This document shows, in pieces, positions 15,723 through 57,049 of a stretch of DNA of 64,000 nucleotides. The notes under the pieces were generated by a model. It had not been told where the DNA came from. It worked only from the letters and a program-made list of their open reading frames with translations, and ran no database searches. Numbering within the stretch: position 1 is the stretch's first letter; each line of letters opens with the position of its first letter. Location: positions 287,556,001-287,620,000 of the forward strand of contig NW_027362765.1 of the NCBI RefSeq assembly GCF_046119375.1, in the 5' to 3' direction. Origin of the DNA: Phyllobates terribilis. Its lineage: Eukaryota. A program made the translations under genes and the position numbers.

Positions 15723-18006
15723 GGCTATGTGCCCACGATGCAGAAATGAAGCAGAAAATCTCTGCAGCATTTCTGCGTCTCCCTGGCAGAAAAAAACGTA
15801 TGCAGATTGTGCATGCGTTTTTCCTGCAGAATACATGCGGATCCACATGCGGATTCACTTGCGTTTCCGCATGCAGATTGACAAGCGCTTTCCAGGCGAT
15901 AGCATCACTTGGAAAGTGCTTGACAACTAGGTCACACTGTATAAATCCATGCAAACAGCATGGATTTATACAGTGTGAACCGTAAAAATTAAAACAAATA
16001 AAGCTATACTCACCCCCGAGGCCCCGGTGTGTGCAGCAGCGCTCGTTCCTGTCTGGTTCCTGGCTGCCGGCATATCGCGAGACAGAGCGGTGAAGGGCCT
16101 GTGGTCACATGACTGTGACGTCACCGAAGGTCCTTCAGCGCTGCCGGCATTCAGAGAGAAGCCGCCGGACAGGTGAGTATAAACTTTATTTGTTATTTAA
16201 TTCTTTTTTTACAGGTACAATGGTACCCAGGTCTGGAGGAGAGTCTCATCTCCTCCAGACTTGGGTACCATCCGCACATAGAAACGCATAGAAGCCGCTT
16301 GTACAAATGTACAGACACAGATTCTATGCGTCTCAATGCAAGTCAATGGCGGGAGTTCCGCTGCACTTCCGCAAAATTAAATGACATGCTGCGGATTTTT
16401 GTACGCAGCATGTGCATAGAACATGCGGAATCCCCTTGGGGACCATGGGGTGCGGATTACCTAGCGTTTTACAAGCGTTTCCGCTGCGGAAATTCCGCAG
16501 CATAAACGCTTGGAAAACGCTGAGGCTGTGTGCCCACGTTATGTATTACAAGCGTATATGCTGCGGAATTTCCGCAGCGTAAACGCTTGTAAAATGCATG
16601 TATATCCGCACCCCATGGTCCCCAATGGCATTCCGCAATGTCAATGCCCATGCTGCGGATTTTTCCGCAGCGTATATGCTGCGGTCAAAAATCCGCAGCA
16701 TGTTCATTAATTTTGCGGAAGCGCAGCGGAATCAATGTGCGGATGGTACCCAAGTCTGGATGAGAGGAGACTCTCATCCAGACCTGGGTACCAAAGAACC
16801 TGTAAAAAAAAGAAAAAATAAAGTTTATACTTATCTTCTGATGTCTTCCCGGTGTTTTCCAAGCCGTCGCGCTGTTGTGTGAAGGACCTGCCACGTCATT
16901 GAGTCATGTGACCCATCACATGACTCAATGACGTCACCGCAGGTCCTGCACACAACAGCGTGAGCCGCTCAAGACTCCGGACGGGGCACAGAATGCATCG
17001 GAAAGTGAGTATAAACTTTATTTTTTTATTTTTTACCATTCTGATTCTTTTTTTTTAACTATTACTTGGTCACACTATATAAATCCATGCCGGTTGCATG
17101 AATTTATATAGTGTGAACAAGTAGTCAAGCACTTTTCCAAGTGATGCTTAAATCACTTGGAGAAGTGCTTGATAACCCGCATGCGGAAATGCATGCAAAA
17201 ACGCTGCAAAGACGCCTCACAAACGCTTCTACCTGGCGGGAAAACCGCATGTAAAATCTGCATGCGATTTTCCCGCCAGGGAGAAGCGTGAAAAATATGC
17301 TTCAGTTCCGCAACGTGGGCACATAGCCTGACAAGCGCTTTCCAGGTGATTTTAGCATCACTTGGAAAGTGCTTGACAACTAGGTCACAGTATATAAATC
17401 CATGCAACCGGCATGGATTTATATAGTGTGACTGTAAGAATGTTTAAAAAAAAAAAAAAAAAAACCTATACTTACCCTCTGATGGCCCGGCGTGTGTAGC
17501 TGCGCTCGCTCCTGTCTGCCAGCTGATCGCGGGACACTGCACTGAAGGGCCTGCGGTCACATGACTGTGACGTCACCGCAGGTCCTTCAGTCCTGCCCGC
17601 AAGCACAGGGAAGGAGACCAGGGGCCGTCGGAAGGTGAATATAATCTTTATTTATTATTTTATTCTTTTTTTTACAGGTACAATGGTACCCAGGTCTGAA
17701 TGAGAGTCTCCTCTCCTCCAGAACTGGGTACCATCTGCACATTGAAACGCATATAATCCGTGAGTACAAATGTACAGACACGGATTATATGCGTCTCAAT
17801 GCAAGTCAATGGCGGGAGTTCCGCTGCACTTCCGCAAAATTAATGGACATGCTGCAGATTTTTGAGCGCTGCAGAATCCGCAGCATGGGCATAGAACTTG
17901 CGGAATCCCCTTGGGGACCATAGGGGGCCGATTACCTAGCGTTTAACAAGTGTTTACGCTGCGGAAATTCCGCAGCATATATGCTTGAAAAACGCTACGT
18001 GGGCCC
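15723..18006. mobile_element. Three copies (+, -, + truncated) of an approximately 0.8-kb Harbinger-like MITE
   Basis: Termini GGCT(A/G)TGTGCCCACG; copy 16524-17328 flanked by TGA on both sides; shared internal hairpins. Confidence 0.8.
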
Positions 18007-18540
18007 TTAGGCTATGTGCACACGATGCAGAAATGCTGCATATTTTTTGCGCTTCTCCCTGGCAGGAAAAACGCATGCAGATTTTACATGCGTTTTTCCC
18101 GCCAGGTAGAAGCGTTTGTCAAGCGTTTTTTCATGCATTTCTGTATGCGGGTTATAAAGCGCTTTCCAAGCGCTTTTAGCATCACTTGGAAAAGTGCTTG
18201 ACAACTTGTTCACACTATATAAATCCATGCAACCGACATGGATTTTATATAGTGTGACCAAGTTAGTTAAAAAATAGAATAAGAATGGTAAAAAATAAAA
18301 AAAACAGGAATTATTCCTACCGTTAATTACATTTCCAGGAGTCCATCATAACGGCACAACAGGAGTTAAGTCCTCTGTTCCTCTAGGGACAGGAAACACA
18401 TGAGAGGTTAAAAGCCCCCCCCATCACACCCTCAGTGTTAGTACTAATCACCAAACCAGGATGGATGCAACTCTATTTTATTATATACATATACCAATGT
18501 TACATTCACATTAGTGTCAAGAGCAGGGGCGGGAAATATG

Positions 18541-18630
18541 GTGTCGTTATGATGGACTCCTGGAAACGTAATTAACGGTAGGAATAATTCCTATTTTACC
18601 AGTACGTCCATCATAACGGCACGACAGGAG
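18541..18630. other. DIRS internal complementary region (ICR)
   Basis: 18541-18592 complements 18306-18357; 18595-18630 complements 21387-21422. Confidence 0.93.
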
Positions 18631-18658
18631 ACATACCAAATCAAAAGAAATGGAACAT

Positions 18659-20221
18659 TTAGGGCGGGACTACTGCTTGAAGGACTTTACGGCCATAGGC
18701 TAATTGTTGACTGGACAATACATCCAATTTATAATGTTTACTAAATGTGGATATATTGGACCAGGTTGCTGCCTGGCAAATTTGGCTCACTGACGCTCCA
18801 GCTTTCTCTGCCCAAGAAGCGGAGATTGCCCGAGTAGAATGAGCTTTAAGTGAAATTGGTGGATCCTTCCCCTCAGGTTCATACGCGAGGGCGATAGTCC
18901 TTGTCAACCACTTTGCTAGAGTCGGCTTAGAAGCTTTCTTGCCCTTATTCACACCCGAAAACTGCAGAAAAAGGTTTGAGCCTCTCCTCCAGGGGGCTGT
19001 GATTTCTATATACCGAACAATTGCCCTCCTGATGTCCAAGGTATGGAAGGATTTTTCCTTTTCATTTTTGGGGGACTGGCAGAAAGACGGCAGTATTATC
19101 TCTTGATTCAGGTTCGAACTGGACACCACCTTAGGGTGAAAGGAGGGATCCAGTTTAAGAACCAATATGTCCTCCAGAATCTTAAGGTATGGGTCCAGAA
19201 CTGAGAGAGCCTGGATCTCGCCTACCCGTTTCGCTGTAGTAACTGCCACAAGAAAGGCTGATTTCATAGAAAGCAGGTCTACTGATGTTTCTTCTAGGGG
19301 TTCAAAGGGAGACTTACATAAAGCCCTCAACACCAGGTTCAGATCCCACGGCGGTACTAGACTCCTTATCGTGGGTTTTAAACGAGAAGTTGCTTTTATG
19401 AACCTTGATATCCATGGGTGGTCTATTAAGGAGTAGTCCAAAAAAGCACTTAGGGCCGAGATATGAACTTTTAACGTATTTGGCCTCAGACCCTTATCAA
19501 TCCCCTCTTGGAGGAAATCCAATATCGTTGGAATATTGGGGCGAGATGAATTTCCCACAGACTGACCTGCAAAGCTACAGAACTGTTTCCAAATCCTAGT
19601 ATAGATGGCTGACGTTACTGGTTTCCTACAGGCTTGTAGAGTTGTAATTACCCGATGGGAAAGGCCCTTAGAGGCTAGGATCCGCCTCTCAGGTTCCATG
19701 CTGTCAATTGGAGGAATTGGATGTTCGGATGTAACAAGGGACCCTGCAATAGAAGATCTCTCCTGGCTGGGAGATCCACCGCCATCCGGTGTAGCAGAGG
19801 GAACCAGCTCTTTTTGGGTCAGTAAGGCGCTATCAGAATAAGAGCTCCCCTCTCCTGTTGGATTTTCCTTAGTACTCTTGAGATGAGAGGGACTGGAGGA
19901 AAGGCGTACACCAGTTTTGTCCCCCATGATTGAGAAAGGGCATCTATTCCTTCTGGGCTGTCGGCTGGGTCCAAGGAAAAAAAGCGCTGCAGGTTCCTGT
20001 TTTTTCTTGTTGCGAACAGGTCTATGAACGGGGTGCCCCATCGTTGAATGATTTGGTGAAACACCTCCGGATTCAGCTCCCAATCTGAGGGACCAACCCT
20101 GAAATTTGACGACCTGTGTAGGGATTGAAGGACTAATATATCCTGCCATAGACTTTTGAGATCCACGGGGGAGCGAGGACGAGTGATTTGGAAATGACGA
20201 GGGGGGGGGGGGGGGGGGCAT
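18659..20221 (-). CDS. DIRS tyrosine recombinase; open 520-codon frame, recombinase domain from about 19699 (346 aa)
   Basis: KRVGE, PKV, HSTR, ATWS, KHY motifs (R-K-H-x-x-R-W-Y); PWDLNLVL motif; no stops. Confidence 0.92.
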   Translation of the reverse strand: MPPPPPPSSFPNHSSSLPRGSQKSMAGYISPSIPTQVVKFQGWSLRLGAESGGVSPNHSTMGHPVHRPVRNKKKQEPAALFFLGPSRQPRRNRCPFSIMGDKTGVRLSSSPSHLKSTKENPTGEGSSYSDSALLTQKELVPSATPDGGGSPSQERSSIAGSLVTSEHPIPPIDSMEPERRILASKGLSHRVITTLQACRKPVTSAIYTRIWKQFCSFAGQSVGNSSRPNIPTILDFLQEGIDKGLRPNTLKVHISALSAFLDYSLIDHPWISRFIKATSRLKPTIRSLVPPWDLNLVLRALCKSPFEPLEETSVDLLSMKSAFLVAVTTAKRVGEIQALSVLDPYLKILEDILVLKLDPSFHPKVVSSSNLNQEIILPSFCQSPKNEKEKSFHTLDIRRAIVRYIEITAPWRRGSNLFLQFSGVNKGKKASKPTLAKWLTRTIALAYEPEGKDPPISLKAHSTRAISASWAEKAGASVSQICQAATWSNISTFSKHYKLDVLSSQQLAYGRKVLQAVVPP

Positions 20222-20340
20222 GGGAGAAGTCTATTTTGAAACCTTCCCCTAAGAAACGTATGATCCATTGATTTTTTGTAATGGACGCCCACTTGTCCTG
20301 AAAGAAAAGAAGCCTGCCCCCTACTCCAATGGCGTCATGG
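19675..20340 (-). pseudogene. DIRS pol remnant: N-terminus fused to the methyltransferase-like C-terminal domain; RT and RNase H absent
   Basis: VGGRLLFF...GFKIDF, then DLFAT...YAFPP...IAPY*; frameshift at an 18-nt homopolymer (20201-20218); TGA at 19819-19821 where Trp is expected. Confidence 0.85.
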
Positions 20341-20741
20341 TCTAGCTGGCCTAGGTCTTTTCTGGCGAGGAGAGGGTTGAACTATTTGGGGTGACGGCTG
20401 TGTACGGGAAGGCATGAGGCTCGAGACTGTACTCTGGACCTCCTCACGAATCATAGATCTTATATCCGTCAAAAAGGCTATACATTTTTTACACAGCCAC
20501 TTTTTATATGAGTCCTGAAGCTTCGTGTTACAGTCTACACATCGTCTTGATTTTTTGGAAGAAGATCCAGACCTCTGGGTTCCCCTCTCCTAATCCATAT
20601 AAAAATATAAAAGGACACTGGAGATTTACTATAAAAACCTGTCCTAGAATACTCTGATTTATCCAGAGAAGGGCCTAAGGCTGTACTCACACTGCCCAGG
20701 GACTCTGAAGGGGCTTCTGACCGTGAAGGATTAGCTTCCAT
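20335..20741 (-). CDS. DIRS mini-gag, 101 aa after splicing: join(20691-20741,20335-20589)
   Basis: gacaccATGG Kozak; gtgagt...ttag 101-nt intron; spliced frame gives CVDC-x12-CKKC and ends CCA TGA overlapping the pol start. Confidence 0.72.
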
Positions 20742-22249
20742 GGTGTCAGTGTGTGATCCAGGTGGTAGCCACGCCCCCAACGATAATCGCTATTCTTAAT
20801 GCCCTGGAGGCTCATCACTGCCTCCGGGCACCTGTGCGTTCTGGGTGCCGAAGCCCCTCTTCTCAATGTCGGAAGGAGAAGCGGCGTGCGCTCCACCCTG
20901 GAACGCACGCTGGCCAAAGCGGATGTCCGCCCTTCTGACTCCGCCTCCCGGGCGGATGTCACGCACCGCGCTCGGCGTGCGCTCCACCCTGGAACGCACA
21001 CCGGCCCCAAAGCGGATGTTCGCCCTGATGACTCCGCCTCCCGCCGGAAGCCATACACCGCGCTCCTCCGTGGAGCGCACGCCGGCCTTTCAGCCGGTGG
21101 GATAGCGCAACGCACAGAGCCCCCTGTCCGGGGGATACAGCGGCAAGCGGCGGTCTTCTGGCTGAGGGACCCCGCAAAGGGGTATCAGCATGGAGCCTCT
21201 GGACCGAAGGAAGGGGAGAGTTCTCAGACCCCCCCCAATCCCCCTGGCTCTCAGGTAACTTCTATCTTCGGAGAACCTCTCCATAGCGTCCTGTCCTGCT
21301 AGGGACAGGAAAAACACTGAGGGTGTGATGGGGGGGGCTTTTAACCGCTCATGTGTTTCCTGTCCCTAGAGGAACAGAGGACTTAACTCCTGTCGTGCAG
21401 TTATGATGGACGTACTGGTAAATAAAGTTTATACTCACCTTCCGGTGTCCTCCCGGTGTTATCTCTGCTGAGTCTGGTGTGTTGGGCGGCTCACGGTGGT
21501 GTGAAGGACCTGCGGTGAAGTCATTGAGCCATGTGATGGGTCACATGACTCAGTGACGTCATGGCAGGTCCTTCACAACAGCGTGAGCAATGCAAGAGAC
21601 CGGACGGAGCAGACAAAACACCGGGAGGACATCGGAAGGAGAGTATAAACTTTATTTTTTATTTTCAATTCTTTTTTTTTTTTACAGTTTCTATGGTACC
21701 CGGGTCTGGATGAGAGTCTCCTCTCCTCCAGACTTGGGTACCATCCGCACATAGAAACGCATAATATCCGTGTGTACAAATGTACTGACACGGATTATAT
21801 GCGTCTCAATGCAAGTCAATGGCGGCGATTACGCTGCGTGTCCGCAAAATTAATGGACATGCTGCGGATTTTTGAGCGCAGCATAAACTCAGCGGAAAAA
21901 TCCGCAGCATGGGCATTGACATTGCGGCTCATCATTGGGGACTATGGGGGGCGGATTACCAAGCGTTTCCAAAGCTTTTATGCTGCGGAAATTCCGCAGC
22001 ATATACGCTTGTAAAATGCTACGTGGGCACATACCCTGACTCTGTAATGTCTTTATTGTCTGTACAAGTTCCCTCTGAAATGTAAAGTGCTGCGGAATAT
22101 GTTGGCGCTATAGAAATAAAAATGATTATTTTTGCATTAGTGGCACTTAACTTTCTAGCCTTTTGTTAACCCTCGCCCAACTTTGAGATTTGTTGCTGCC
22201 ATCAATTTCTAAATGAGTTTTTTTTCAAATGAAATGGAAAAATGTCTAA

Positions 22250-33525: not shown

Positions 33526-36062
33526 CTAAGAACGTGCCTCTGTTTTAGACTTCACTATGGTAATGACACTAGTGGCAGCTACTTTCCCTGGTATAAGAGG
33601 CCTCATGCCAGGTGTATACGCCCCCCTCGGAGGGTTGATGGGATTCCTAGCTACAGTCCTGGCAAAGTTCTGAAGAGCTTCATACTTTGACCTTAGAGAG
33701 TCCAGTTCCTGGCGCATGCTAGCATTCTCAGAGGCAAGCTTCTCCACCTCCTGCTGCAATTCTGCCTTCTGCTTCTCCAGTTCTTCTTTTTGTGTTACCC
33801 GCTTTACCCTGCAGCTTGCAGCATAGCCACGGTTCTTAAGCGTACGGCGACGTTGCTTCAGCTGGATGATCTCCTCCTTGGTCAAACCACGGAGATGCTG
33901 GTTCAGCTCCCGCACAGACATGGTGACCAATTCTTCATCCGTAAGACTGGTGCCATTCTCCCCGGGCTCCCTCTTTACCTAAGTGAAAAGCAGAAAAATA
34001 GTACGAATGGCACCAGAAAGATGCACACGAACTCTTGTCAAAGGTTTTATGTCCTATATGCCATGCTATAGACAGTATTTATGGATGTATTCATGCCCTT
34101 CAGCGGGTACACAGCAACTTCACTGTGTTACTGGAAAGCAAACTCATCAAGTGGAAAATGGTCAGTGCGAGACTATGTGAACTGACCCAACACCAGGGAT
34201 GCAATGCCATAAAACTACCAAATCAAGGGGCCAGAAATAGTGACTCTATTGACAAGTCATTAAAACAGTAATGTTAGAAGAAGGTTATGGAAAGCAATAC
34301 AATCTGGGGGGGTCTCAGCAATCGAACCCCCAGCGTTCTAGAAGTTATCACCCACCCTGTGGAGCCGGAATTCCGCTTTAATTCTGATGTGTGCAAGCAG
34401 CCTAAAAATGACTCTCTGGTTTTAAGTCTATTGACAAGTCAGAGGATTGCATCTGTTGCAGTCTATGGCAACATGGTCAACTTTAGTTTTCTGATCTCCA
34501 AGAAAAAAGCTGAAAAGGCATTTGTATTCTGCCTCCTACTTTACGGAGAAAATAGAAAATATCCGTCAGGAAATCAGCTCCCAGCCACATCTCTCCCATC
34601 CCTCCCCACATCTCCTGTAGCTCACTCTCCACATTTGACCCAGCCAGAAGAAAAAGTCTCCACCCTCCTCTCTTCTTCTCATCCCACTACATGCACCACT
34701 GACCCCATTCCCTCATACCTACTTCAGTCTCTCTCTTCAGTTGACAATACTCACCTAACTAAAATCTTCAATCTCTCCCTCTTTTCTCGTATCTTCCCCT
34801 CCTCCTTCAAACACTCTATCATTACTCCATTATTAAAAACAACCCTCTCGTGACCCATCCTGAACAAAAAACTACAGACCAGTCTCCAATCTCCCCTTCA
34901 TCTCTAAACTCTTGGAGCACCTGGTCTACTCTAGCCTTACCCGTTACCTCTCCACTCACTCTCGCTTCCGCCCCCTACATTCTACAGGAACTGCACTCAT
35001 CAAAGTGACCAATGAACTTTTGACAGCAAAACGTAATGGTGACTACGCTCTGCTGCTTTCGACACTGTTGACCACCAGCTCCTACTCTCTATGCTCCACT
35101 CAATCGGCATAAAGGACACTGCTCTCTCCTGGTTCTCCTCCTATCTTTCTGACCGCTCCTTCAGTGTATCGTTCGCTGGCTCCACTTCTTCCCCCATTCC
35201 TCTCACTATTGGGGTTCCTCAGGTTTTAGTCCTTGGCCATCTTCTCTTTACACAGACCCAATTGGACAGACCATCAGCAAATTTGGCTTTCAGTACCATC
35301 TTTACGCTGATGACACACAACTATACACCTCATCCCCTGACCTTACCCCAACTGTACTACAGAGCACCAATTGACTGTCTGTCCGCAGTTTCCAACATCA
35401 TGTCCGCTCTCTATCTGAAACTCAACCTTTCCAAAACTGAACTTCTTCTGCTCCCACCATCTACTCACCTCCCTAAATCTGACATCTCCCTCTCCATGTG
35501 TGGCACCAGAGTAACGCTGAGCCAGCAGTCTCACTGTCTGGGTATTTTGTTTAACACCAATCTTTCCTTCACCTTCCATATACAATTTCTTGCCTGCTCT
35601 TGTCGCTTGCACCTGAAGAACATCTCTAGAAGCCGCCCCTTTCTCACCTTGGAAACAACAGAAACCCTCACTGTTGCCCTGATCCACTCCCGCCTTGACT
35701 ACTGTAACGCTCTATTAAGTGCCCCCCCTCACTCGACTTTCCCCTCTCCAGTCCATCCTTAATGCTGCAGCCAGGGTCATTATCTGGCTAATCGTTACAA
35801 AGACGCTTCCGCTCTGTGTCAGTCATTAAACTGACTGCCCATACATTATAAGATCCAATTTAAATTGCTTGTTCTCACCTCCAAAGCTCTCCACAGTGCG
35901 GCACCCCCCTACATCTCCTCCCTCATTTCTGTTTATCGGCCTATATGTTCTTTATTCTCCGCAAGCAACTTTCAACATCCGCACTAATCTGCATAGCTCC
36001 AAGACTTCTCCCAAGTTGCACCAATTCTCTGGAATGTTCTTATCACGTTCCCTAATTGAAGT

Positions 36063-55426: not shown

Positions 55427-57049
55427 TACAGACCAAACGTTTGGACACACCTCATTTAGAGATTTTTCTGTATTTTCATGACTATGAAAATTGTACATTC
55501 ACACTGAAGGCATCAAAACTATGAATTAACACATGTGGAATTATATACTTAACAAAAAAGTGTGAAACAACTGAAAATATGTCTTATATTCTAGGTTCTT
55601 CAAAGTAGCCACCTTTTGCTTTGATGACTGCTTTGCACACTCTTGGCATTCTCTTGATGAGGTTCAAGAGGTAGTCACCGGAAATGGTCTTCCAACAATC
55701 TTGAAGGAGTTCCCAGAGATGCTTAGCTCTTGTTGGCCCTTTTGCCTTCACTCTGTGGTCCAGCTCACCCCAAACCATCTCGATTGGGTTCAGGTCTGGT
55801 GACTGTGGAGGCCAGGTCATCTGGCGTAGCACCCCATCACTCTCCTTCTTGGTCAAATAGCCCTTACACAGCCTGGAGGTGTGTTTGGGGTCATTGTCCT
55901 GTTGAAAAATAAATGATGGTCCAACTAAACGCAAACCGGATGGAATAGCATGCCGCTGCAAGATGCTGTGGTAGCCATGCTGGTTCAGTATGCCTTCAAT
56001 TTTGAATAAATACCCAACAGTGTCACCAGCAAAGCACCCCCACACCATCACACCTCCTCCTCCATGCTTCACGGTGGGAACCAGGCATGTAGAGTCCATC
56101 CGTTCACCTTTTCTGCGTCGCACAAAGACACGGTGGTTGGAACTAAAGATCTCAAATTTGGACTCATCAGACCAAAGCACAGATTTCCACTGGTCTAATG
56201 TCCATTGCTTGTGTTCTTTAGCCCAAACAAGTCTCTTCTGCTTGTTCCCTGTCCTTAGCAGTGGTTTCCTAGCAGCTATTTTACCATGAAGGCCTGCTGC
56301 ACAAAGTCTCCTTTTAACAGTTGTTGTAGAGATGTGTCTGCTGCTAGAACTCTGTGTGGCATTGACCTGGTGTCTAATCTGAGCTGCTGTTAACCTGCGA
56401 TTTCTGAGGCTGGTGACTCGGATAAACTTATCCTCAGAAGCAGAGGTGACTCTTGGTCTTCCTTTCCTGGGGCGGTCCTCATGTGAGCCAGTTTCTTTGT
56501 AGCGCTCGATGGTTTTTGCTACTGCACTTGGGGATAGTTTCAAAGTTTTCCCAATTTTTCGGACTGACTGACCTTCATTTCTTAAAGTAATGATGCCACT
56601 AGTTTTTCTTTACTTGGCAGCTTTTTTCTTGCCATAATACAAATTCTAACAGTCTATTCAGTAGGACTATCAGCTGTGTATCCACCAGACTTCTGCACAA
56701 CACAACTGATGGTCCCAACCCCATTTATAAGGCAAGAAATCCCACTTATTAAACCTGACAGGGCACACCTGTGAAGTGAAAACCATTTCCGGTGACTACC
56801 TCTTGAAGCTCATCAAGAGAATGCTAAGAGTGTGCAAAGCAGTCATCAAAGCAAAAGGTGGCTACTTTGAAGAACCTAGAATATAAGACATATTTTCAGT
56901 TGTTTCACACTTTTTTGTTAAGTATATAATTCCACATGTGTTAATTCATAGTTTTGATGCCTTCAGTGTGAATGTACAATTTTCATATTCATGAAAATGC
57001 AGAAAAATCTTTAAATGAGAAGGTTTGTCCAAACTTTTGGTCTGTACTG
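55424..57049 (-). mobile_element. Full-length Tc1-superfamily DD38E (Intruder-type) transposon, 1626 bp, with one 5' frameshift
   Basis: Terminal inverted repeats of about 240 bp (CAGTACAGACCAAA); 319-codon open frame 55584-56543 with WSDE, QQD-38 aa-E. Confidence 0.92.

What the first reader, a model, noticed from the sequence alone, without database searches (positions are those of the whole stretch)
18305..21422. RT-less DIRS element that keeps an intact tyrosine recombinase and all cis signals
Seen: both inverted termini, a complete ICR, and a stop-free recombinase frame with R, K, HxxR, W and Y motifs. RT and RNase H are wholly deleted and the pol remnant has a frameshift and a nonsense codon. 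Termini differ at only about 3 of 99 positions. Established: DIRS1 elements integrate circular intermediates using this recombinase. Inference: a non-autonomous family that borrows RT in trans but still supplies its own integrase-equivalent, or a streamlined recombinase cassette. One recent deletion copy would look the same.
Basis: partly seen in the sequence, partly recalled or inferred. Interest (0 to 1): 0.8.

Follow-up and report, generated by a model that had tools for sequence, protein, structure and literature searches.

The report
Gutted frog DIRS retrotransposon, recombinase intact
This is a 3.1-kb internally deleted copy of a frog DIRS-type retrotransposon that has lost its capsid-like and reverse-transcriptase genes but keeps intact ends and an apparently sound Cre-like recombinase gene. 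It is most likely an ordinary defective copy rather than a new kind of element, and the decisive copy-number test could not be run here.

Summary
A DIRS-like element lies on the minus strand at 18304-21422. Its inverted termini match at 96 of 99 bases. A 90-nt internal complementary region (ICR) mirrors the joined ends. TTT sits at both ends, and an uninterrupted paralogous target site fixes the boundaries to the base.

The 520-codon recombinase ORF is open. It keeps 69 of 70 highly conserved residues and all catalytic motifs, and it folds like full-length Cre. No trace of RT or RNase H is found with 122 pol homologues.

The element would therefore need gag as well as RT in trans.

The "family that keeps its own integrase" idea could not be tested. 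The element is single-copy in the window, no protein above 57% identity exists in the databases, and exact-word scans found nothing. Apart from one stop, the methyltransferase remnant is about as well preserved as the recombinase, so the recombinase shows no selective sparing. At the estimated age (about 1.8% divergence), an open ORF is only mildly unexpected (P about 0.05-0.45).

Most likely this is a young, one-off or low-copy defective copy. Interest is modest.

The parts
21313..21422 (-). 5' inverted terminal repeat. The element starts with TTT (21420-21422, AAA on the + strand).
   Evidence: I3: 96/99 identity in the core, 104/110 with the outer part. TTT ends match the Xenopus DIRS-like families (PMC9210276).
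20599..21312 (-). 5' leader, GC-rich and CpG-island-like, with a 93-nt tandem repeat (20882-21065). No recognisable coding sequence.
   Evidence: GC 0.66 and CpG observed/expected 0.84 at 20750-21250; tandem repeat. ORFs here have no Pfam hit.
20335..20598 (-). gag remnant. It has an ATG at 20596-20598, a stop at 20590-20592, an N-terminal CxxC...CxxC knuckle at 20541-20365, and the natural gag stop at 20335-20337. The LAP2alpha-like body (about 1 kb) is deleted between about 20375 and 20340.
   Evidence: It matches L001 gag residues 10-77 only. The sequence context of the gag stop is conserved with L001 and L002.
20196..20339 (-). pre-RT stub of pol, equivalent to L001 pol residues 138-181.
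   Evidence: more than 50 homologues hit this stretch in one frame.
20090..20211 (-). Zone holding the RT/RNase H deletion junction (about 1.2 kb missing) and the change of reading frame. It also holds a G18 homopolymer at 20201-20218.
   Evidence: Upstream-frame alignments run to 20178-20142 and downstream-frame alignments start at 20199-20157. The exact junction cannot be resolved without a close full-length relative.
19675..20088 (-). Dam-like methyltransferase (MT) domain remnant. It is interrupted by a stop at 19819-19821. The natural pol stop is at 19675-19677.
   Evidence: PF05869, weak; 55% identity to L001 pol residues 629-767..
18659..20221 (-). Tyrosine recombinase ORF, 520 codons, open. 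Homology to relatives runs from 20086. The two-domain core lies at 19714-18662.
   Evidence: 69 of 70 conserved columns kept; profile hit to Cre; pLDDT 82.6, TM 0.66-0.74 to Cre.
18541..18630 (-). Internal complementary region, the complement of the joined element ends.
   Evidence: I6/I11; 54/57 and 35/36; as RNA it pairs with the 3' end, z = -13.
18304..18439 (-). 3' inverted terminal repeat (18332-18439) plus a unique terminal extension (18304-18331) that ends in TTT.
   Evidence: I3/I6.
18301..18303 (.). AAA shared between the element end and the target. It is present once in the uninterrupted paralogue.
16996..17086 (-). Paralogous uninterrupted copy of the host MITE-like repeat. It serves as a stand-in for the empty site.
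   Evidence: and I12/I23.

Best explanation
This is a defective, non-autonomous copy of an anuran DIRS-like (DIRS1-group) tyrosine-recombinase retrotransposon.

Shown:
- The ancestor had the usual layout of about 5.5-5.7 kb: ITR, long leader, gag with a LAP2alpha-like domain, pol (RT, RNase H, MT), a recombinase ORF overlapping pol, ICR, ITR.
- Two internal deletions removed the gag body and RT/RNase H.
- The copy entered a T-run of a MITE-like repeat precisely, at a TTT.

Inferred:
- The deletions most likely arose by template switching during reverse transcription, in the cycle that made this copy or shortly before. A less likely origin is later deletion in place.
- Because both ends and the ICR survived, the cDNA could still be completed on the ICR and inserted.
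- If the deletions came first, gag and RT came from autonomous relatives in trans.
- Since insertion the copy has picked up a few point lesions.
- The recombinase ORF is still open because the copy is young and the ORF lies next to the 3' cis signals, not because a special RT-less lineage selects for it.
For: - Canonical anatomy and precise insertion. The same layout is seen in a full-length Dendropsophus copy (L003, 5.7 kb) and in transcript contigs L001 and L002.
- Both deletions are mapped against 122 pol homologues.
- Decay is low and even. The recombinase deviates at 1 of 70 conserved columns and ranks at the median of its homologues. MT deviates at 1 of 21 or 3 of 32, within the homologue range.
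- Repeats inside the element differ by about 6 events in about 339 nt, mostly at CpG. This gives about 1.8% divergence.
- Neutral simulation gives P(475 codons intact) of 0.45, 0.20 and 0.05 at K = 0.005, 0.01 and 0.02. An open ORF is therefore not compelling evidence of selection.
- The element is single-copy in the window and no DIRS partner lies nearby.
- RT acting in trans on a gag/RT-less DIRS-1 construct is published (PMC7192593).
Against: - All three point lesions (two stops and a frame change) fall outside the recombinase frame (P about 0.06 by length).
- At K about 0.02, with a 10% indel share, an intact ORF has P about 0.05.
- The gag deletion keeps the gag frame and its natural stop, and a short island holding the gag-stop/pol-start region survives between the two deletions.
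- Two deletions of 1 kb or more in one young copy is more than simple decay in place would predict.
- Copy number in the source genome is unknown.
Confidence: 0.6

Rival explanations
1. One reading: this copy belongs to a propagating RT-less (and gag-less) DIRS lineage. The lineage borrows replication proteins from an autonomous partner but keeps its own recombinase under purifying selection.
For: - The recombinase is open, keeps 69 of 70 conserved residues and has a full Cre-like fold.
- The cis signals are complete.
- All point lesions lie outside the recombinase frame.
- The gag deletion is in frame.
- RT can act in trans in DIRS-1 (PMC7192593).
Against: - No sibling copy was found anywhere.
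- Apart from one stop, the MT remnant is as well kept as the recombinase, so there is no signature of a long RT-less history.
- The statistics are marginal.
- No reason is known why a trans-supplied recombinase would not do.
Confidence: 0.15
2. It is a member of a propagating non-autonomous subfamily in which the recombinase ORF is carried along incidentally, for example because 3' cis-acting sequences are embedded in or next to it.
For: - Non-autonomous DIRS families exist: TOC1 in Chlamydomonas (PMC9940879) and the DIRS-N1 name in zebrafish (PMC5400779).
- The termini and ICR are intact.
- Insertion was precise.
Against: The same lack of sibling copies applies. Known non-autonomous retroelement families usually shed more coding sequence than this.
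Confidence: 0.15
3. It is a streamlined recombinase cassette that now moves as DNA (Crypton-like), or a host-domesticated recombinase gene.
For: The only intact ORF is the recombinase. The 5' CpG island could drive expression.
Against: - It keeps an ICR, which is needed only for cDNA completion.
- It keeps broken gag, pre-RT and MT remnants.
- TE termini are still attached, and it lies inside a MITE in intergenic DNA.
- About 1.1 kb with many upstream ORFs lies between the element's 5' end and the first ATG of the recombinase ORF.
Confidence: 0.04
4. The deletions or the frame change are assembly artefacts of a collapsed repeat.
For: A G18 homopolymer (20201-20218) lies in the junction zone. 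Its length is error-prone in long-read assemblies.
Against: There are two separate clean deletions. The flanks continue into a paralogous empty site. No N run lies nearby.
Confidence: 0.03

Closest known systems
Anuran DIRS-like families (Repbase DIRS-n_XT/XL of Xenopus, PMC9210276; full-length copy L003 in Dendropsophus ebraccatus)
   Same: - ITRs of about 110-120 nt.
- A two-part ICR that slightly overlaps at the junction.
- TTT at both ends.
- gag with an N-terminal knuckle.
- A Dam-like MT domain after RNase H.
- A recombinase ORF overlapping pol.
- The ITR motif AT(G/A)ACGGCAC, shared with L003.
   Different: - 3.1 kb instead of 4.1-6.2 kb.
- The gag LAP2alpha-like body and RT/RNase H are missing.
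- Protein identity to any database member is at most 57%.
trDIRS-1 construct of Dictyostelium (PMC7192593)
   Same: It is an internally deleted DIRS that lacks GAG, RT and RNase H but keeps the ends and the ICR. It was reverse-transcribed by endogenous RT in trans.
   Different: It is an engineered construct in an amoeba. Full retrotransposition of that construct was not demonstrated.
Chlamydomonas TOC1 (non-autonomous DIRS) and INT1 (DIRS remnant with RNase H, MT and recombinase but no RT), PMC9940879
   Same: TOC1 shows that non-autonomous DIRS families exist. INT1 shows an RT-less remnant that keeps MT and the recombinase.
   Different: INT1 is a remnant inside a tandem repeat at the mating-type locus and is not described with transposon ends. 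TOC1 is not reported there to keep a recombinase.
Cre recombinase of phage P1
   Same: The predicted two-domain fold matches (TM 0.66-0.74). The H-x-x-R, W and Y motifs align to the region of Cre that carries its catalytic H, R, W and Y.
   Different: Identity is only 13-16%. The protein is eukaryotic and encoded by a retroelement. Its target appears to be a TTT-centred junction.

Membership tests
DIRS-like (DIRS1-group) tyrosine-recombinase retrotransposon | Inverted terminal repeats | tested here: met
   99-nt core with 96/99 identity (I3).
DIRS-like (DIRS1-group) tyrosine-recombinase retrotransposon | ICR complementary to both termini, in circle-junction order | tested here: met
   18541-18630, with 54/57 and 35/36 matches and a 3-nt overlap (I6/I11).
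DIRS-like (DIRS1-group) tyrosine-recombinase retrotransposon | Tyrosine recombinase in place of a DDE integrase | tested here: met
   PF00589 hit below the cut-off, profile hit to Cre at 1e-6, fold match to Cre, catalytic motifs present.
DIRS-like (DIRS1-group) tyrosine-recombinase retrotransposon | RT and RNase H domains | tested here: not met
   No Pfam hit. None of 122 pol homologues aligns outside the pre-RT stub and the RNase H-end/MT segment. The copy is a member by descent only, as a deletion derivative.
DIRS-like (DIRS1-group) tyrosine-recombinase retrotransposon | Dam-like MT domain after RNase H | tested here: met
   PF05869 weak hit. 55% identity to L001 pol residues 629-767, with one internal stop.
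DIRS-like (DIRS1-group) tyrosine-recombinase retrotransposon | gag-like ORF1 (LAP2alpha-like in anurans) | tested here: not met
   Only the part matching L001 gag residues 10-77 is left, plus the natural stop.
DIRS-like (DIRS1-group) tyrosine-recombinase retrotransposon | TTT at both ends and no target-site duplication beyond the shared trinucleotide | tested here: met
   The Xenopus pattern is described in PMC9210276.
Non-autonomous retroelement family (TOC1 or DIRS-N1 type) | Lacks RT but keeps the cis signals | tested here: met
Non-autonomous retroelement family (TOC1 or DIRS-N1 type) | Several copies at independent loci that share the same internal junctions | not testable with these tools
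   Single copy in the window. The source genome cannot be searched. No close protein, no exact 25-mer match in metagenome or prokaryote contigs, and the exact protein is not on record.
Non-autonomous retroelement family (TOC1 or DIRS-N1 type) | Autonomous partner with matching termini | not testable with these tools
   No other DIRS coding sequence in the 64-kb window.
Crypton (tyrosine-recombinase DNA transposon) | Recombinase as the only element-derived coding sequence, with no retroelement remnants or ICR | tested here: not met
   gag, pre-RT, RNase H-end and MT remnants and an ICR are all present.
Domesticated recombinase gene | Loss of transposon ends and orthologous conservation | tested here: not met
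   The ends are intact and the copy lies inside a MITE. Orthology could not be tested.

The most novel reading that the evidence does not exclude
The copy is one of many in a gag-less, RT-less DIRS lineage that outsources replication to an autonomous partner but keeps its own Cre-like recombinase under purifying selection. Such a partial parasite would control its own integration. It would sit halfway between a retrotransposon and a Crypton-like DNA element.
Probability: 0.12. Interest if true: 0.65.

Novelty: new member of a known kind. Interest (0 to 1): 0.3.

Why it matters
As it stands, this is a well-preserved example of how DIRS elements decay. It also gives base-level evidence of TTT-centred integration in a frog.

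If same-junction copies exist and show selection on the recombinase, this would be the first non-autonomous tyrosine-recombinase retroelement known to keep its own integration enzyme. That would bear on two questions: whether DIRS recombinases act preferentially in cis, and how retroelements and Cryptons exchange recombinases. DIRS surveys usually keep only copies that have RT, MT and the recombinase (PMC3266345), so such derivatives would have been overlooked.

Tried and rejected
- **Sibling copies.** Self-BLAST of the window found only the element itself. The protein search gave a best hit of 57% identity. An exact 25-mer from the ITR/ICR found nothing in the metagenome or prokaryote collections. 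The exact protein is not on record.
- **RT-less relatives in other frogs.** All candidates were rejected.
  - P0001 (909 aa, single exon) is the long recombinase ORF overlapping pol, not an RT-less element.
  - P0058 spans 4.18 kb for 438 aa, so it is a spliced gene model on full-length elements.
  - P0011 lies on a full-length 5.7-kb element.
- **Differential decay of MT against the recombinase.** A first count (4/36 against 1/70, P = 0.04) shrank after alignment-uncertain columns near the junction were removed. Measured against the spread among homologues, the window's MT is not an outlier.
- **Locating the RT/RNase H junction to the base.** Short-peptide matches were ambiguous. Only a zone of about 100 nt can be given.
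- **Species identification through the Tc1 transposase.** It is 92% identical to copies in both fishes and dendrobatid frogs, so it is not diagnostic. The source is an anuran, and the recombinase's best hits are dendrobatids.
- **ITR divergence as a clock.** It was used only with a caveat. Xenopus consensus sequences also show differences between the left and right ITRs (PMC9210276).
- **Rfam.** No hit in the window.
Full report
**What is there.** The window is anuran DNA. All close protein hits are frog "uncharacterized proteins". Reading the region and scanning for repeats shows a DIRS-type element on the minus strand.
- The inverted termini are 18341-18439 and 21313-21411, identical at 96 of 99 bases. 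The match extends to 110 columns with 6 differences.
- The internal complementary region (ICR) at 18541-18630 is the reverse complement of the left end (18301-18357, 54/57) joined to the reverse complement of the right end (21387-21422, 35/36). The two halves overlap by three bases. This is exactly the complement of the junction that would form if the ends were joined in a circle.
- As RNA, the ICR and the 3' end form a 57-bp stem (z = -13).
- In its own orientation the element begins and ends with TTT. The same is reported for the Xenopus DIRS-like families (PMC9210276).

**Boundaries and insertion.** The element sits inside a palindromic MITE-like repeat. A paralogous uninterrupted copy of that repeat (16996-17086, reverse complement) aligns to the left flank up to 18303 and to the right flank from 21420. 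The two alignments abut in the paralogue with only AAA shared.
- The insert is therefore 18304-21422 (or equivalently 18301-21419), 3119 bp.
- It went into a T-run at a TTT with no other duplication.
- This fits the published idea of a trinucleotide shared by the circle junction and the target (PMC7192593, PMC9210276).

**Coding content.**
- The only long ORF is 18659-20221 (-), 520 codons.
- Frog homologues align from about 20086 to 18662 at 40-57% identity.
- Against 58 homologues the window protein keeps 69 of 70 columns that are at least 90% conserved. That puts it at the median of the homologues themselves.
- A profile of the core hits Cre recombinase (E = 1e-6) across the H-x-x-R, W and Y block.
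- An AlphaFold model (pLDDT 82.6, pTM 0.72) matches full-length Cre with TM 0.66-0.74.
- Counting from the ATG at 20219-20221, the catalytic positions are R332, K364, H461, R464, W487 and Y497.
- By every sequence test available the recombinase gene looks sound.

**What is missing.** Full-length relatives give the reference layout. They are two transcript-like contigs (L001, L002) and a 5.7-kb genomic copy from Dendropsophus ebraccatus (L003) with the same ITR and ICR plan. The layout is gag of 387-413 aa with a LAP2alpha-like domain, pol of about 700-770 aa (RT, RNase H, Dam-like MT), and a recombinase ORF that stays open for 1.2-1.9 kb across pol in another frame. Against these, the window keeps only four pieces:
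- the N-terminal CxxC...CxxC part of gag (20541-20365) and the natural gag stop with its conserved context (20335-20337);
- a pre-RT stub (20339-20196);
- the end of RNase H;
- the MT domain (to 19678).

All 122 pol homologues hit only these stretches.

**Point lesions.**
- A stop at 20590-20592 falls two codons after the only upstream ATG of the gag remnant.
- The reading frame changes between the pre-RT stub and the MT domain. This is probably at the deletion junction, though a G18 homopolymer (20201-20218) in that zone could also be misread.
- A stop at 19819-19821 falls at an MT column conserved in at least 98% of homologues.
- None of these touches the recombinase frame.

**Is the recombinase specially preserved?** Three tests were possible, and all gave weak or null results.
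- **Age.** If ITR against ITR and ICR against termini were identical at insertion, as the Cappello model holds (PMC7192593), about 6 independent changes in about 339 nt give about 1.8% divergence, several of them at CpG. A neutral simulation then gives P(no stop) of about 0.45. With an assumed 10% indel share, P(open ORF) is about 0.05. At 0.5-1% divergence it is 0.2-0.45. The clock is shaky, because Xenopus consensus sequences also show left/right ITR differences (PMC9210276).
- **Lesion placement.** Three of three point lesions fall outside the recombinase frame, P about 0.06 by length.
- **Differential decay.** Apart from its stop, the MT remnant deviates at no column (of 21) or at two conservative columns (of 32). 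That is within the range of its homologues. The recombinase deviates at 1 of 70.

Together these say the whole element is young and evenly little-decayed. They do not show a lineage that long ago gave up pol while selection kept the recombinase.

**Family or one-off?** This could not be tested.
- The element is single-copy in the window and no other DIRS coding sequence is present.
- No database protein exceeds 57% identity.
- A 25-mer that occurs three times in the element has no exact match in the metagenome or prokaryote collections.
- The exact protein is not on record.
- Apparent RT-less relatives in other frogs turned out to be long overlapping ORFs or spliced gene models on full-length elements.

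**Mechanism.**
- Shown: canonical DIRS cis anatomy, a precise TTT-centred insertion, loss of gag body, RT and RNase H, and a sound recombinase ORF.
- Inferred: the deletions arose by template switching during reverse transcription or, less likely, later in place. If the deletions preceded insertion, gag and RT were supplied in trans. This is plausible, because DIRS-1 RT copies a gag/RT-less construct in trans and the ICR is essential for completing the cycle (PMC7192593).
- Whether this copy's recombinase is ever made is unknown. About 1.1 kb of leader and remnants with many short ORFs lies between the element's 5' end and the first ATG of its ORF.

**Comparison and novelty.** Non-autonomous DIRS elements are known (TOC1; the zebrafish DIRS-N1 name), and so is an RT-less remnant with RNase H, MT and recombinase (INT1 in Chlamydomonas) (PMC9940879, PMC5400779). 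This copy is a new member of that known kind. A demonstrated family with selection on the recombinase would be a new variant.

**Verdict.** The most likely reading is a young defective copy (0.6). Interest is 0.3.

Noticed in passing
window 16802-16860, 16996-17086, 17630-17660, 21420-21657: A family of palindromic MITE-like repeats, with one hairpin of 117-nt arms at 21420-21657. The DIRS copy is inserted in the T-run of one member.
   Followed up: partly
window 33526-33930 (-): An exon encoding a Maf-type bZIP domain (PF03131, E = 2e-30). It is probably the main coding exon of a small Maf gene, about 12 kb from the element.
   Followed up: no
window 55584-56543 (-): A Tc1/mariner transposase ORF of 319 aa. 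It is 89-93% identical to copies in several fishes and in dendrobatid frogs. The spread across hosts suggests horizontal transfer.
   Followed up: partly
L001 1641-4148, L002 2317-4521, L003 4413-6278: In full-length relatives the recombinase ORF stays open for 1.2-1.9 kb upstream of its conserved core, across RT/RNase H/MT in another frame. Overlap of these ORFs is known for Xenopus DIRS-like families, but its extent here is striking.
   Followed up: partly
window 18341-18357 and 21395-21411; L003 1000-1012 and 6662-6674: An ITR motif, AT(G/A)ACGGCAC, is shared between two DIRS families whose recombinases are only about 44% identical. Each family also has a short palindrome next to the 3' terminus. 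These could be a recombinase binding site and a priming hairpin.
   Followed up: no
P0058 (Bufo gargarizans, four loci) and P0023 (Engystomops): These gene models join the gag N-terminal knuckle directly to the recombinase core across about 2.9 kb. This is either a spliced subgenomic recombinase mRNA or an annotation artefact.
   Followed up: no
window 20750-21250: The element's 5' leader is a CpG island (GC 0.66, observed/expected 0.84) with a 93-nt tandem repeat at 20882-21065. The high CpG retention fits a young or unmethylated copy.
   Followed up: partly
   Followed up: no
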